A DNA stretch of 63,247 bases, the filler included, from Octopus bimaculoides (taxonomy: Eukaryota), in NCBI RefSeq assembly GCF_001194135.2. It is 7 parts of 7 records of this genome, joined end to end, with 100 filler letters (N's around TTAATTAATTAA, not from the genome) between each part and the next. Parts side by side here need not be neighbours in the genome. Positions count along the whole stretch, not along the records: positions 45,198 to 57,378 come from NC_069004.1; 6 more parts are not named here. One strand, written 5' to 3'. A model generated the notes under the pieces. That model saw only the letters and a list, made by a program, of their open reading frames with translations, did not search any database and was not told where the DNA came from. Positions within the stretch are counted from its first letter, which is position 1. Every line of letters begins with the position of its first letter. A program made the translations under genes and the position numbers. Below, in pieces: positions 45,198 to 48,815 of this stretch.

Positions 45198-45268
45198 AGA
45201 CAGACAGATAGATAGACAGATAGATAGACAGATAGATAGATAGATAGATAGATAGATGTTCTTTATTA

Positions 45269-45331
<63 letters not shown>

Positions 45332-45789
45332 ACACACACACACACACATGTACATTACTGAGACGTACTTGCAAGGCTAGTTTAGGTGTGAAATCGTGCT
45401 GCCGCCGCGCCCAACAACTCTATAACGACAACTGTCATTATTATTACTGCTACTACCACTACCACTACTACTATAATGAAGACGACCTCTACTACTACCG
45501 CTGCCGCCGCCGCCACCACGATTAATACTACAACAATAATAACAATTATTGGGTTGGTGCATAATTATTGCGGATTTTTTTTTCAACAAAGTTTATTCAA
45601 CAAAAAAACGTGTAACAAAAACAACTTTAAATGATTATTCTGGAGCATATTCACCATCTACTTCAATTACTGCTTCCCATTTGTTTGGTAGACGGCCAGA
45701 CCGTCACTTTAAGAAGTTTTTGTTAAATATTGTTATTGCTTTTGTGGAATAAAGTTTGTTGAAAAAAGGCTGCAATAATTATGCGTCAA

Positions 45790-45811
45790 CCCACAACAAC
45801 AACAACAACTG

Positions 45812-45860
<49 letters not shown>

Positions 45861-45886
45861 CACTACTACTACTACTACTACTACTC
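45790..45886. repeat. (AAC)n-(TAC)n
   Basis: Direct reading. Confidence 0.95.
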
Positions 45887-45894
45887 AATATATC

Positions 45895-46100
45895 ACAAGA
45901 TTGTGGTTTCATTTCTTGAACCTGGTGGTGCATTGTGTTCTTCAGCGAAACCAGTCATCTCACGTGTAAGATAACACAGAAGGTGGGCGGTGTTACCCCC
46001 GAAAAGGGTTATGGTAAATATGGAGAAGAAGACCATCACCTACAAGGTACTCCAATAAGACCACAGTCAAATGACTGGAACAAGTAAAAGAATAAAAGAA
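45895..46100 (+). mobile_element. SINE-like element with the family A 3' tail on a different body
   Basis: B-box-like gtggtttcatttcttgaacc; ends cacagtcaaatgactggaacaagtaaaagaataaaagaa. Confidence 0.5.
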
Positions 46101-46104
46101 GATA

Positions 46105-46356
46105 TATATTTTTTTAAAAGGACAATAATAACAATATACATACATGTATAAACATATTATGCTTTACATATATAATATATGAAATATAAAATACCAGTAA
46201 TTATTAAAATATATAACTTAGAGCATATCCTTCTTTCTATGCTCTACGTTATATATTTGAATAATTACTGGTATTTTATATTTTATATATTATATATGTG
46301 AAGCATAATATGTTATACATGTATGTATATTGTTATAATTGTCTTTTTAAAATATA
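46105..46356. repeat. AT-rich near-perfect hairpin, ~120-bp arms, 10-nt loop
   Basis: ..aaaataccagtaattatt..tagagcata-tccttctttc-tatgctcta..aataattactggtatttt.. Confidence 0.9.
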
Positions 46357-46419
46357 ATTAGACATAATATAATGTCTTAAAGTTGATGAATACTACCTCT
46401 TGATCCCCTCCATTGCTAA

Positions 46420-46555
46420 AATGGTACTTCTTTTATCAGCCCCAAAACGACGAAAGGCAAACTGGAACTCTGCGGAATTTGAAGCCACAACGGAAAGACG
46501 GACAAAACTGCGGCTATGCATTATATCCGGCGTATTAACGATTCCACCATCTCGT
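46420..46555 (-). mobile_element. SINE family B, diverged
   Basis: ggtacttcttttatc..gaaaggcaaa..gcggaatttgaa..taacgattc. Confidence 0.6.
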
Positions 46556-46615
46556 CACATTATAATGTAACAAATATATTAATAACATGAAAGCTTTATA
46601 GGTCATAAAATATAA

Positions 46616-46621
46616 TTTATT
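46616..46621 (-). terminator. Candidate polyadenylation signal (AATAAA) for SLC17 copy 1
   Basis: AATAAA about 660 nt after the stop, inside a block also present downstream of copy 2, where it is retained at 51714-51719. Confidence 0.4.
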
Positions 46622-47032
46622 AGTTCATTATTCTCAGTTGAAGAACAAATGTATGCTTATGGATGGAGTTTAGATGGACATACGTTCATCTTGCAATTGG
46701 TCAATGTGTGCATAAAATATAATGGCAAAGATATTCTGACGAGGTCTATTCGAAACTGAAATACAGGGTTGACAACTTTATTTCACCCGGTAAGCTAATA
46801 TTCGATTGCATACTTCAGCCAACATACACATTCAATTTTGAAATTGCCTCGCCTTATTACACTGAACTGCTAATAATTTCGAGAAAATTTTATGTACCTA
46901 TTCTGGACGTAAAACAATGTTTTAATGTATAAAGAAGTTACCACGTGCGGTGTTCGGTACATCATACACTCACTTGTTTTACATATACATACAAGCAGAC
47001 ATACATAAAAACATATANNNNNNNNNNTATAT

Positions 47033-47066
<34 letters not shown>

Positions 47067-47280
47067 TATGTCTATATATATTTGAGAGAAGAAAATAGTT
47101 ACCATAAGCTATCTGTTCGACGATTTAGCTTGTGATATTTTAAATAAAATATATTAATGTTAATTGTATAGCTACACTGTTTACTTAACAGATATATACA
47201 TACTTACATTACACAGACACCGGTGTAAACAAATGTAAGATCTTGTCAGGTTTGATCTCGCTAAGATTCCAGTAATCTAG

Positions 47281-48744
47281 TTAAACCGTTGTATTTGTGT
47301 TCATATCGTTAAGAGGAACAGATAAAGCAAAGTCTTTCGAAATCGCCCATTTTTCGGTTTCTCCCTTTGCCAATATTGCGTACAATATCGCACCGACTAC
47401 ACATATAGCAGCACACAAGGCTAACACAATCTGCCATTCTTCTTGTGTACCGTTTGGGGTTAGAGCTTTTGTAGTTAAGGAACTGATACTACCAGACATT
47501 GTTGCGAAAGCATTAGCAATTCCAAATACGGTCCCAGCATAACTTGGAGCAATATCACTGTTGTTGACGAGAACACCACCACTGGTAAATGATAAAGTTA
47601 TTCCAATGAGAAACAAGAGCGTAATTATTGGAATGGTTTGGTCGCATCTGAGGAATCCTACGGCAATCAACAGACATGCTGAAGCAATTAGTGCAAAGGT
47701 TTGGAATAAAACTCGAACACAACGAGTTGACATATATTTCTTTAAACGTATAAAATCAGCTAAGTTCCCCCACAGGGGTAGTGCGATGATCAGTCCAAGC
47801 GATGGAACAGATGACATTAAACCGTTGGAGGTTGCATTAACGTTTAAGGCTTCTTTCATATAGAGAGGAAGCAACACCTGGAAAGACAAATCAGTCCAAC
47901 TATGAGCAAACCAACCAAAGCAAATGGCCCAAACTGCAGGTGAAGAAATCAGTTGTATCCATGGCACTGTTTTAACTACCTTTTCACTTATTATACTTCT
48001 GTTTAAATAAGAATGTTCTTTTTCGCTGATAGTTGGATGGACATCTGGAGTATCATAAACAACATAAAACCACACACAACTAAACACTAACGATAATCCA
48101 CCGAATACATAAAATATAGAACCCCATCCATTGTCAAAGCCATAAACACAAAGATAACCTGATGTTGAAAGACCTACAACACTCCCTAGAATTTGACCTG
48201 CAAATGTAAACCCAACCAATAAACTGATTTCTTGCGGAGGCGCCCAACGACCATATAAGGACTGAACTGCTGGGATTATCGGTCCTGATAACAAACCTGT
48301 TAAAATTCTGAGAACAAGCGTAATGTAACCACTAATTCGAGACAAACTTGGATGAAGAATGGTCAGAATGCCTGCTGAAAGTATTGAACCTGCGACAACT
48401 CTTTTCCCACCGTATTTATCAGCCAATAAACCACCTAGAATGTTTGTTATTACATATCCATAGAAGTACCCAGCCAGCATGTTCGATTGTAACGTATCAC
48501 TCCATTCGAATTCTCCTTTAAAATTTTGATTTATGGAATGATTATCTGAACTGGAACACTCTTGGTTGTTTGCAGAAATGTTAACTTCTTCGTTTGTACG
48601 ATTGGGCGTTTTCAACATACACACAAATGCCATACTTAGATCAACTCTTAATGTTTGCATAACGAGAAACGCTGCAGTAGAGGCATAACATAATCTCCAT
48701 CGGCATGAGTAATAACGTTTAATCCAGCTGGTAAATTTAGACAT
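47281..48744 (-). CDS. SLC17: SLC17 / anion:cation symporter family MFS transporter (sialin-like), 487 aa, single coding exon (copy 1)
   Basis: Uninterrupted ORF, ATG 48744-48742 (context CAAAATGT) to TAA 47283-47281. About 12 hydrophobic segments. Family motifs align with human sialin: LRVDLS (LRVNLS), YFYGY, GGK, RWAPPQE (SWAPPLE), PWIQL, LLPLYMKE, DIAPSYAG, EWQIV, AKGE..W. Luminal loop 1 has three N-glycosylation sequons (NRT, NIS, NHS). Orthology within SLC17 is not resolved. Confidence 0.96.
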   Translation of the reverse strand: MSKFTSWIKRYYSCRWRLCYASTAAFLVMQTLRVDLSMAFVCMLKTPNRTNEEVNISANNQECSSSDNHSINQNFKGEFEWSDTLQSNMLAGYFYGYVITNILGGLLADKYGGKRVVAGSILSAGILTILHPSLSRISGYITLVLRILTGLLSGPIIPAVQSLYGRWAPPQEISLLVGFTFAGQILGSVVGLSTSGYLCVYGFDNGWGSIFYVFGGLSLVFSCVWFYVVYDTPDVHPTISEKEHSYLNRSIISEKVVKTVPWIQLISSPAVWAICFGWFAHSWTDLSFQVLLPLYMKEALNVNATSNGLMSSVPSLGLIIALPLWGNLADFIRLKKYMSTRCVRVLFQTFALIASACLLIAVGFLRCDQTIPIITLLFLIGITLSFTSGGVLVNNSDIAPSYAGTVFGIANAFATMSGSISSLTTKALTPNGTQEEWQIVLALCAAICVVGAILYAILAKGETEKWAISKDFALSVPLNDMNTNTTV

Positions 48745-48801
48745 TTTGTGTAAATTTCAATTTTTACCAATTTTCACAACGTTTTACTTGATGATCAGAA
48801 T

Positions 48802-48815
48802 CTGAAAATATAATC
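48802..48815 (-). promoter_or_regulatory. Splice acceptor of a 5'-UTR intron, SLC17 copy 1
   Basis: tatattttcag|ATTC, 57 nt before the ATG, and conserved in copy 2. Candidate donors: TG|GTAAAT at 49027 (conserved in copy 2 at 55628) or AG|GTATGT at 49253. Confidence 0.6.

What the first reader, a model, noticed from the sequence alone, without database searches (positions are those of the whole stretch)
47281..48744. SLC17 transporter with a rebuilt proton-coupling and substrate pocket
Seen: hand alignment to human sialin (sequence from memory) keeps the R39, R57, Y119, K136 and R168 equivalents (R15, R33, Y97, K114, R146). It replaces the TM4 acidic residues E171->T149 and E175->S153, plus H183->Q161, R195->I173 (PPLERS->PPQEIS), Y54->Q30, H298->W278, Y301->H281 and Y335->S315. 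Two new aspartates appear within helices: N59->D35 (RVDLS) and F305->D285 (WTDL). Known: the TM4 glutamate (sialin E175, VGLUT2 E191, DgoT E133) is a protonation site, and Y54/R57/Y119/H298/Y301/Y335 line the sialin pocket; VGLUT has Arg at the Y301 position. Inference: probably neither a sialic acid/H+ symporter nor a VGLUT, and possibly a transporter with a new substrate or relocated or absent ion coupling. Sialin-like genes have been reported as an expanded family in the octopus genome.
Basis: partly seen in the sequence, partly recalled or inferred. Interest (0 to 1): 0.75.

Follow-up and report, generated by a model that had tools for sequence, protein, structure and literature searches.

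The report
Octopus intronless sialin-like transporter copy
This is an intact, selectively maintained member of an octopus-specific tandem array of intronless SLC17 (sialin-like) membrane transporters; the "missing" proton-coupling glutamates are ancestral to a large invertebrate clade, and only the remodelled substrate cavity and gates are specific to the octopus array.

Summary
Window 47281-48744 (-) is a 487-aa single-exon ORF from Octopus bimaculoides.

Loss of both TM4 glutamates is not a rebuild in this gene. It is shared by molluscan, annelid, nemertean and brachiopod "sialin-like" proteins, and by 97 of the 137 closest 50%-identity cluster representatives. T149, S153, D35 and H131 are already fixed in the multi-exon octopod progenitor gene, which keeps a sialin-like pocket. 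Octopus also keeps a separate E/E-type SLC17 gene.

The following are specific to the octopod array:
- All coding introns were lost, which points to a retrocopy, and the copy was then duplicated in tandem with a period of about 6.5 kb.
- The N-terminus is trimmed to 15 residues.
- Otherwise conserved cavity and gate residues were replaced (Y54Q, R195I, K197L, Y306L, Y335S) and constraint on those sites was released.
- D285 was gained in TM7.

dN/dS is about 0.22, so the gene is functional. It is most likely an organic-anion transporter that does not use the sialin TM4 proton relay. Its substrate is unknown. The family expansion has been on record since 2015.

The parts
47281..48744 (-). Complete single-exon CDS (487 aa plus stop) of an SLC17/sialin-like MFS transporter; 12 predicted TM helices
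   Evidence: ORF; MFS_1 2.3e-54; sialin 3.9e-93, VGLUT2 1.4e-70, DgoT 3e-12; AF2 pLDDT 84, pTM 0.84; Foldseek best hit sialin 8u3f, TM 0.94, rmsd 2.5 A; identical to O. bimaculoides CM046624.1
48700..48744 (-). Trimmed 15-residue N-terminus MSKFTSWIKRYYSCR, ending at R15 (= sialin R39); no [DE]xxxL[LI] dileucine motif
   Evidence: Conserved across the whole intronless clade. The progenitors have 23-70-residue acidic tails
48640..48657 (-). TM1 segment Q30-T-L-R33-V-D35: Y54Q (specific to the array), the conserved substrate arginine R33 (= R57), and D35 (= N59, an N-domain tunnel position)
   Evidence: tunnel and pocket roles from PMC9858498
48352..48354 (-). H131 (= sialin T153, tunnel-lining); His in the octopod progenitor and in 19 of 27 array members
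48286..48309 (-). TM4 segment R146-I-L-T149-G-L-L-S153: R168 equivalent kept, both glutamates (E171, E175) replaced
   Evidence: The state is ancestral:
48220..48228 (-). I173-S174-L175 (= R195-S196-K197, the cytosolic-gate salt-bridge residues of sialin); two of the three charged or polar partners are lost
   Evidence: R is invariant and K/R is invariant in 29 other molluscs; gate roles from PMC11116495
47878..47913 (-). TM7 cavity stretch W278-F-A-H281-S282-W-T-D285-L286-S-F-Q289 (= H298, Y301, N302, F305, Y306, L309)
   Evidence: Ungapped alignment to sialin and VGLUT2; these positions are among the most variable between paralogues
47800..47802 (-). S315 (= Y335, a gate-supporting Tyr that is invariant in 29 other molluscs)
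53826..54332 (-). C-terminal 169 codons of the next tandem copy (81% aa identity); its 5' part is lost in the N gap 54334-55293
   Evidence: tblastn; dN/dS 0.25 against the query
46559..46965 (.). 3'-flank segment of the duplication unit, repeated at 51660-52090 (66% identity)
   Evidence: Self-blastn
48923..49034 (.). 5'-flank segment of the duplication unit, repeated at 55524-55635 (72% identity); unit period about 6.5 kb
   Evidence: Self-blastn
48802..48813 (-). Possible splice acceptor (TTATATTTTCAG) 58 nt upstream of the ATG. If real, a non-coding 5' exon would exist
   Evidence: Read from the sequence only; not verified

Best explanation
The ORF is a functional paralogue in an octopod-specific, head-to-tail array of intronless SLC17 ('sialin-like / slc-17.2-like') transporter genes.

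Origin: the array arose when a processed copy of a multi-exon cephalopod gene (P0043/P0121 type, at least 11 coding exons) was inserted on another chromosome and then amplified in tandem. This happened before Octopus and Argonauta split.

What the protein keeps: the SLC17 fold, the two anion-binding arginines (R33, R146), Y97, N411 and the MFS motif-A-like loops. I therefore expect it to be an alternating-access carrier of an anionic, probably carboxylated, solute.

What it lacks: the TM4 Glu-Glu proton relay of sialin. That loss is ancient and shared across Lophotrochozoa. Transport is therefore not sialin-type H+ symport through TM4. It is probably driven by membrane potential or is facilitative, unless D35/H131 (inherited from the octopod progenitor) and D285 (gained within the array) act as substitute counter-charges or protonation sites for R146 and R33.

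What is new in the array: a trimmed N-terminus without a lysosomal dileucine signal, replacement of otherwise invariant cavity and gate residues, and release of constraint on those sites, so that paralogues carry different cavities.

Shown: gene structure, array, phylogenetic position, purifying selection, residue states and their distribution. Inferred: anion substrate, coupling mode, non-lysosomal location, different substrates for different paralogues.
For: Identity and fold.

Source and array: there is a 100% match on O. bimaculoides CM046624.1. Neighbouring single-exon copies lie on the same strand at 5-6 kb spacing in L001 and L005, and in O. sinensis L004. The unit within the window is about 6.5 kb.

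Retrocopy origin: P0043 has at least 11 coding exons spread over about 34 kb on a different chromosome. The query, the most basal member P0028, and P0026 are single exons.

Functional gene: dN/dS is 0.216 against the collinear O. sinensis orthologue (63.5 synonymous and 50.5 non-synonymous differences) and 0.25 against the tandem neighbour.

Phylogeny: the intronless clade is monophyletic, sister to P0043/P0046/P0047, and nested in the glutamate-less molluscan clade. Argonauta sequences interleave in three subclades.

Ancient TM4 loss: and 53 (97 of 137 with no TM4 acid, 16 with E/E).

A separate octopus E/E-type gene, P0334, is closer to human sialin (45% against 37% identity).

Cavity: entropy at 14 literature-defined pocket sites is 1.48 in the array against 0.96 in other molluscs, although overall entropy is lower in the array (0.94 against 1.30); permutation p = 1e-4. 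Between paralogues, cavity identity is lower than overall identity, whereas in other molluscs it is higher. Parsimony steps at pocket plus gate sites are 0.54x the mean in other molluscs (P = 0.0006) against 1.26x in the array.

Charge bookkeeping: acids at positions 59 or 305 occur in 0 of 24 sequences with a TM4 acid and in 40 of 133 without. Formal cavity charge is 0/-1 (E/E types), mostly +2 (other glutamate-less), +1 (progenitor), and mostly 0 (array).

N-terminus.
Against: There are no expression or transport data for this gene or for any glutamate-less SLC17 relative in the literature I could search.

The excess of change at cavity sites over the average site is only marginal once phylogeny is respected (P about 0.05-0.06). 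Relaxed constraint therefore cannot be separated from adaptive diversification.

Two of the three cytosolic-gate salt-bridge residues and the gate Tyr are lost, which could mean altered or impaired alternating access.

No poly(A) remnant or target-site duplication was found to prove retroposition.

The tree is a distance (NJ) tree without support values.

Residue orientation rests on homology to sialin, not on measured coordinates.
Confidence: 0.7

Rival explanations
1. Relocated proton coupling. The protein is still an H+-coupled symporter. D35 (TM1, paired with R146, with H131 nearby) and D285 (TM7, paired with R33) take over the roles of E171 and E175.
For: N59 and T153 line the lumen-accessible tunnel that ends at E171/R168, and F305 lines the central constriction next to R57 (PMC9858498). 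Acids at 59 or 305 occur only on glutamate-less backgrounds (0 of 24 against 40 of 133). Formal cavity charge returns to 0, as in E/E-type proteins. DgoT uses a TM1 aspartate (D46) as a second protonation site.
Against: The counts are dominated by one clade and so are not independent. Most glutamate-less relatives have no compensating acid at all and are conserved, so compensation is not required. D285 is present in only 16 of 27 array members. DgoT D46 aligns to sialin L56 (query L32), not to position 59. No distances or pKa values could be computed.
Confidence: 0.2
2. One reading: this particular protein, or cephalopods alone, rebuilt the SLC17 proton-coupling site, making it an exceptional SLC17.
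For: Both structural papers describe the TM4 glutamate(s) as conserved across SLC17, so relative to the characterised members the change looks unique.
Against: The glutamate-less state is found in bivalves, gastropods, chitons, a nemertean, annelids, a brachiopod, rotifers and a nematode, and in 71% of the 137 nearest diverse representatives. The T/S/D/H combination is inherited from the multi-exon progenitor.
Confidence: 0.05
3. Relaxed or lost transport function. After retroposition the copies lost the ancestral substrate. The cavity and gates drift, and the proteins are kept for another reason (for example as a receptor-like 'transceptor', a chaperone, or a leak or channel-like anion pathway), or they are slowly decaying.
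For: Residues that are invariant in other molluscs are replaced (R195, K197, Y306, Y335, T434, Q123). Cavity sites evolve at about the average rate rather than more slowly. The array contains fragmentary copies.
Against: The 487-codon ORF is intact, and dN/dS is 0.22-0.25 against the orthologue and the neighbour. R33, R146, Y97, N411, D330 and the motif-A-like loops are conserved. Cavity residues are 24-26 of 27 identical between the closest cross-species pairs. The 12-TM model is confident. Some of the fragments are explained by assembly gaps.
Confidence: 0.12
4. It is simply the octopus orthologue of sialin (SLC17A5) and exports sialic acid from lysosomes.
For: Human sialin is the best PDB hit. 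NCBI names several clade members 'sialin'. Sialic acids have been reported in octopus (PMC10225777).
Against: Both coupling glutamates are absent, and E171Q/E175Q abolishes or strongly reduces sialin transport. Of the 14 literature-defined pocket positions only 3 are retained (R57, Y119, N430). There is no dileucine motif. A different octopus gene, P0334, is closer to human sialin and keeps E/E and most pocket residues. The gene is one of many lineage-specific copies.
Confidence: 0.03

Closest known systems
Human sialin (SLC17A5; PDB 8DWI, 8U3D-H, 9AYB)
   Same: 12-TM MFS fold (TM-score 0.94 to 8u3f); 36-37% identity; equivalents of R39, R57, Y119, K136, R168 and N430; glycosylation sequons in the TM1-TM2 luminal loop.
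   Different: Both H+-coupling glutamates are replaced (T149, S153). 11 of 14 pocket positions differ. The cytosolic-gate residues R195 and K197 and the gate residue Y335 are replaced. The N-terminus is 24 residues shorter and has no dileucine motif. The CDS is intronless.
Octopod multi-exon 'sialin' (P0043 in O. sinensis, P0121 in O. bimaculoides, P0122 in Argonauta), the likely parent gene
   Same: T171, S175, D59, H153, R57, R168; sister clade in the tree; 45% identity.
   Different: The parent has at least 11 coding exons over about 34 kb on another chromosome and a long acidic N-terminus. It also has a fully conserved sialin-like pocket and gates (Y54, H183, R195, K197, H298, Y301, N302, Y306, Y335, H414).
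Lophotrochozoan 'sialin-like / slc-17.2-like' proteins (bivalves, gastropods, chitons, annelids, nemerteans, brachiopods)
   Same: No acid at either TM4 position; R57 and R168 kept; 36-42% identity; the octopod clade nests among them.
   Different: They keep Y54, R195, K/R197, Y306, Y335, T434 and Q123 almost without exception. They usually have N59 and N305, which gives a formal cavity charge of +2.
Rat VGLUT2 (SLC17A6; PDB 8SBE, 7T3N/O)
   Same: Fold (TM-score 0.88-0.90); R184 equivalent (R146); a basic residue (H281) where VGLUT2 has the substrate arginine.
   Different: The VGLUT2 allosteric H+ sites H128 and E191 correspond to L90 and S153 here. Identity is about 30%.
E. coli DgoT (D-galactonate/H+ symporter; PDB 6E9N/O)
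   Same: Fold (TM-score about 0.87); R47 and R126 equivalents; an acidic residue in TM1 near the substrate arginine.
   Different: DgoT D46 aligns to L32 and E133 to S153, so neither DgoT protonation site is present. Identity is about 20%.
Bilaterian 'MFS9/sialin' E/E-type SLC17 clade (octopus member P0334)
   Same: Same family and fold.
   Different: This clade keeps E171, E175, H183, H298, F305, Y306, Y335, S411 and H414. It is 53-62% identical across phyla and closer to human sialin than the query is.

Membership tests
Major facilitator superfamily | 12-TM MFS fold / Pfam MFS_1 domain | tested here: met
   PF07690 at 2.3e-54; AF2 model with 12 TM helices, pLDDT 84; all top Foldseek hits are MFS transporters
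SLC17 (ACS) family | Closest relatives are SLC17 members; the two cavity arginines are conserved (sialin R57/R168 = DgoT R47/R126) | tested here: met
   Sialin 3.9e-93, VGLUT2 1.4e-70, DgoT 3e-12; R33 and R146 present
SLC17 (ACS) family | TM4 glutamate (sialin E175 = VGLUT2 E191 = DgoT E133), stated to be conserved across the family | tested here: not met
   S153 at this position and T149 at E171. However, 97 of 137 of the nearest diverse relatives also lack both, so the feature defines only the characterised members
Sialin (SLC17A5) orthologue | E171/E175 H+ relay | tested here: not met
   T149/S153
Sialin (SLC17A5) orthologue | Sialic-acid pocket residues (Y54, R57, Y119, H298, Y301, N302, F305, Y306, S411, N430) | tested here: not met
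   Only R33, Y97 and N411 are retained
Sialin (SLC17A5) orthologue | N-terminal dileucine lysosomal sorting motif | tested here: not met
   The 15-residue N-terminus has no [DE]xxxL[LI]. That this motif sorts human sialin is from my own knowledge
Sialin (SLC17A5) orthologue | Orthology by phylogeny or similarity | tested here: not met
   Lineage-specific multi-copy clade. Octopus P0334 is closer to human sialin (45% against 37%)
Sialin (SLC17A5) orthologue | pH-driven Neu5Ac transport | not testable with these tools
   Needs an uptake assay
VGLUT (SLC17A6-8) | H128, R184, E191 and the TM7 substrate arginine | tested here: not met
   L90, R146, S153, H281
DgoT-type 2H+ symporter | D46 and E133 protonation sites | tested here: not met
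   L32 and S153 at the aligned positions
Lophotrochozoan glutamate-less 'sialin-like / slc-17.2-like' clade | Nests in the clade; no TM4 acid; R57/R168 kept | tested here: met
   NJ tree; residue tables
Octopod intronless sialin-like tandem array (the 'sialin' expansion of the octopus genome paper) | Single-exon CDS; head-to-tail neighbours; Q54 with T171/S175; 15-residue N-terminus | tested here: met
   I could not check that this is the set of genes meant by Albertin 2015 because the paper is not held
Processed retrogene | All parental introns are absent | tested here: met
   The parent has at least 11 coding exons; the query, P0028 and P0026 are single exons
Processed retrogene | Poly(A) remnant and target-site duplications | tested here: inconclusive
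   There is no A-tract within 500 nt downstream, only one ATTAAA at +357, and a (CA)n run plus an N gap interrupt the flank. Such marks are expected to erode after ancient tandem amplification

The most novel reading that the evidence does not exclude
The octopod intronless SLC17 array is a set of carriers with paralogue-specific cavities. In them the SLC17 arginine counter-charges have moved from TM4 to TM1 (D35 with R146, plus H131) and across the domain interface to TM7 (D285 with R33). This would create a new coupling or gating mechanism and allow substrates outside the classical SLC17 range. It would be a lineage-specific transporter radiation comparable to the octopus expansions of receptors.
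Probability: 0.15. Interest if true: 0.7.

Novelty: new variant of a known kind. Interest (0 to 1): 0.42.

Why it matters
Structural work on sialin, VGLUT2 and DgoT treats the TM4 glutamate(s) as a family-wide coupling element. This window led to the finding that most of the protein's nearest relatives across Lophotrochozoa lack them. That offers natural test cases for how SLC17 carriers work without the relay.

Within that clade, the octopod array is a dated and compact example of a retrocopy followed by tandem amplification. Constraint on the cavity and gates was released, and new acids appeared next to the two substrate arginines. If the paralogues prove to be expressed in particular tissues and to carry different solutes, the array would be a transporter counterpart of the other octopus-specific gene expansions.

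As it stands, the gene is an annotated member of an expansion reported in 2015, with no functional data. The finding is therefore of moderate interest, not exceptional.

Tried and rejected
1. Pseudogene or decaying retrocopy: rejected by the intact ORF and dN/dS of 0.22-0.25.
2. Reading the octopus genome paper for what it says about 'sialins': not held under the PMC id or the DOI. Only a secondary citation was found.
3. Measuring whether D35 and D285 face the pore: structure prediction returns no coordinates, so only homology to described sialin positions could be used.
4. Looking for a functional precedent among glutamate-less invertebrate SLC17s. The C. elegans VST-1 paper gives no TM4 residue information. 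The Drosophila HisT paper only lists SLC17 genes as negative candidates. The Drosophila MFS paper shows Na-dependent phosphate uptake by MFS13, but I could not place MFS13 relative to this clade.
5. Other genes or transposon domains in the piece: six-frame ORFs are low-complexity and Pfam finds nothing above threshold.
6. Retroposition hallmarks (poly(A), target-site duplications): not found.
7. Entropy-based evidence for 'diversifying' cavity evolution was re-tested with parsimony on the tree. The claim was downgraded to 'constraint released, excess marginal'.
8. Identifying the species of the unnamed Logan and ENA relatives, to decide whether squids share the array: the sample accessions alone do not name the organism.
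9. P0002 as a possible annotation of this ORF: it is a fused 1.5-copy model of another paralogue.
Full report
WHAT IS THERE

Within the piece 45198-57378, the minus strand carries an uninterrupted 487-codon ORF at 47281-48744. Pfam assigns it to MFS_1 (2.3e-54). Against all PDB sequences the best matches are human sialin (3.9e-93), rat VGLUT2 (1.4e-70), VGLUT3 (1.1e-66) and E. coli DgoT (3e-12).

An AlphaFold2 model built on a 59-sequence alignment is confident (pLDDT 84, pTM 0.84) and shows twelve TM helices. It superposes best on lumen-open sialin 8u3f (TM-score 0.94 normalised to the target, rmsd 2.5 A), then on VGLUT2 and DgoT.

The protein is 100% identical to a gene on Octopus bimaculoides chromosome CM046624.1. 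A second copy lies about 6.5 kb away on the same strand. Only its last 169 codons are visible (53826-54332, 81% identity) before an assembly gap. Patches of both flanks are duplicated with it. Nothing else in the piece looks like a gene.

CHECK OF THE OBSERVATION

The HMMER alignment to 8dwi_A uses native sialin numbering, which I verified residue by residue.
- Kept: R15, R33, Y97, K114, R146.
- Changed: T149, S153, Q161, I173, Q30, W278, H281, S315, D35, D285.

The background statements are also correct. The one refinement is that Y335 is described as a gate-supporting residue, not a substrate contact.

HOW UNUSUAL ARE THE CHANGES?

Across 120 relatives of the query, nearly all molluscan 'sialin-like / slc-17.2-like' proteins lack both TM4 glutamates. 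They carry L/I/V/M/T at position 171 and T/S/A/Q at position 175. The rotifer and nematode hits show the same. A second search extends this to a nemertean, annelids and a brachiopod, whereas deuterostome sialins keep E/E.

In an exhaustive HMMER search of 1.84 billion cluster representatives, 137 of the 150 best hits align at R168. Of these, 97 have no acid at either position, 24 have one and 16 have both.

[quoted passage not shown] Loss of the relay is the normal state for this protein's relatives, not a rebuild in this gene.

By contrast, the following states are rare among the same 137 representatives:
- Q at position 54: 3
- I at position 195: 3
- S at position 335: 3
- L at position 306: 3
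- an acid at position 305: 4
- an acid at position 59: 8

ORIGIN

An NJ tree places all the close octopod hits (O. bimaculoides, O. sinensis, O. vulgaris, Argonauta hians) in one clade. Its sister group is a small set of cephalopod genes (P0043, P0047, P0046), and both nest inside the glutamate-less molluscan group. E/E-type proteins fall outside.

P0043 (annotated 'sialin', O. sinensis) lies on a different chromosome and has at least 11 coding exons spread over about 34 kb. The query, its O. sinensis orthologue, the most basal array member (P0028) and a distant member (P0026) are all single-exon genes. They sit head to tail at 5-6 kb spacing.

Simultaneous absence of all parental introns is the signature of a processed copy. 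No poly(A) or target-site remnants survive.

Argonauta sequences interleave with Octopus sequences in three subclades, so much of the amplification predates that split. The whole clade shares a trimmed, conserved 15-residue N-terminus. The progenitors have long acidic tails.

THE GENE IS ALIVE

Against the collinear O. sinensis orthologue (89% nucleotide identity over 3.2 kb, including 1.5 kb upstream), dN/dS is 0.216 with dS 0.215. Against the tandem neighbour it is 0.25.

WHICH CHANGES AROSE WHEN

- T171, S175, D59 and H153 are fixed in the multi-exon octopod progenitor orthologues (P0043, P0121, P0122, P0047, P0123). These otherwise keep Y54, H183, R195, K197, H298, Y301, N302, Y306, Y335 and H414.
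- The intronless clade then replaced Y54 (Q in 26 of 27), R195 (I in 14 of 27, never conserved), K197, Y306, L309 (Q in 23 of 27), Y335 (S in 18 of 27) and T434. These positions are invariant or nearly so in 29 other molluscs. The clade also gained D at position 305 in 16 of 27 members.
- W278 with H281 is specific to the query's own small orthogroup.

CAVITY EVOLUTION

I used the pocket and gate residues defined in the two sialin structure papers.
- Entropy: at the 14 pocket sites it is higher in the array (1.48) than in other molluscs (0.96), even though the array is less diverged overall (0.94 against 1.30). Permutation gives p = 1e-4.
- Pairwise identity: between paralogues, cavity identity is lower than overall identity (for example 0.51 against 0.62). 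In other molluscs it is much higher (0.80 against 0.58). In the closest cross-species pairs it is 24-26 of 27.
- Parsimony control: this respects the tree and is more sober. Pocket plus gate sites change at 0.54x the mean rate in other molluscs (P = 0.0006) and at 1.26x in the array (P = 0.058).

Release of constraint is therefore solid. An adaptive excess is only suggested.

MECHANISM

Shown: the fold, R33, R146, Y97, N411, D330 and the motif-A-like loops are retained.

Inferred: the protein is still a carrier for an anionic solute. Because E171Q/E175Q cripples sialin and the equivalents here are Thr and Ser, it cannot use the sialin TM4 relay. Neither DgoT protonation site (D46 to L32, E133 to S153) nor the VGLUT2 allosteric sites (H128 to L90, E191 to S153) are present. 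The default expectation is transport that is driven by membrane potential or is facilitative.

The alternative is that D35, H131 and D285 substitute for the missing glutamates. It has some support:
- N59 and T153 line the N-domain tunnel that ends at E171/R168, and F305 lines the central constriction next to R57.
- Acids at positions 59 or 305 are never seen where a TM4 acid remains (0 of 24 against 40 of 133).
- Formal cavity charge goes from 0/-1 (E/E types) to +2 (most glutamate-less proteins), +1 (progenitor) and back to about 0 in the array.

These counts are not phylogenetically independent, and no distances could be measured.

Two of the three cytosolic-gate salt-bridge residues are lost, so altered gating is possible. 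The missing dileucine signal suggests a non-lysosomal location. That this motif sorts human sialin is from my own knowledge.

RELATION TO WHAT IS KNOWN

The protein is a member of the MFS and of SLC17 in the broad sense. It is not a sialin orthologue. Octopus has a separate E/E-type gene (P0334) that is closer to human sialin (45% against 37% identity) and matches it at 19 of 22 tabulated positions. It is also not a VGLUT.

The octopus 'sialin' expansion is listed among the octopus genome's gene-family expansions. In the library available to me I found no paper that analyses its gene structure, residues, expression or function.

VERDICT

The interesting residue is not the missing glutamates. 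It is an octopod-specific, retrocopy-derived tandem array of SLC17 carriers under purifying selection, with unconstrained cavity and gate positions and new acids next to the substrate arginines. I rate it a new variant of a known kind, with interest 0.42.

Noticed in passing
L006 2001-3611 (ENA ERZ21867824 ctg109893l): P0124, a 536-aa relative of the octopod progenitor group (G59, Y153, S171, S175), is also a single-exon gene on a 107 kb genomic contig of an unnamed assembly. This could be a second, independent or older, intron-less copy in another cephalopod lineage.
   Followed up: partly
P0002 (NCBI 'sialin', O. bimaculoides, 695 aa): This gene model is a fusion of about 1.5 tandem copies: residues 1-466 and 477-692 both align to the query, the second block to query residues 255-470. 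Automatic annotation of the array is unreliable, and counts of family members taken from it will be off.
   Followed up: partly
L001 4413-4919, 14701-15054, 19696-20106, 20347-21087: The array around the query contains several partial copies, some out of order. Part of this is due to assembly gaps, but some may be real fragments or pseudogenes.
   Followed up: no
window 47284-47295 (-), C-terminus: The query ends in -TTV and its O. sinensis orthologue in -KTV, a class-I PDZ-ligand-like tail. Other paralogues end differently.
   Followed up: no
Proteins P0102, P0334, P0320, P0351, P0112, P0326: A bilaterian 'MFS9/sialin' SLC17 clade is 53-62% identical across molluscs, insects, hemichordates and brachiopods. 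It keeps E171/E175 and nearly the whole sialin pocket, but has Glu at the Y301 position. It looks like the conserved single-copy counterpart of sialin in protostomes.
   Followed up: partly
Literature: PMC9858498 and PMC11649914: Both papers state that the TM4 glutamate(s) are conserved across the SLC17 family. In the exhaustive search only 16 of the 137 nearest representatives have both glutamates and 97 have neither.
   Followed up: yes
window 45256-45330, about 47030-47075, about 50000-50030, about 53640-53680, about 56130-56190: There are dense dinucleotide microsatellites ((CT)n, (CA)n, (TA)n) between the copies. One (CA)n run abuts the 10-N gap at 47018-47027. Larger N gaps lie at 50217-50545 and 54334-55293.
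   Followed up: no
window 48802-48813 (-): A polypyrimidine-AG (TTATATTTTCAG) 58 nt upstream of the ATG could be a splice acceptor for a non-coding 5' exon. Several paralogues are annotated with 'isoforms', which would fit alternative 5' exons.
   Followed up: no
L007/L008 (Logan SRR11869390/91, 2590-nt contigs): Identical 2.6 kb contigs from two sequencing runs carry a full-length paralogue (P0029, closest to P0023) with 656 nt of 5' flank and 527 nt of 3' flank. If the runs are RNA-seq, this is evidence that at least one array member is transcribed. The run type could not be checked.
   Followed up: no
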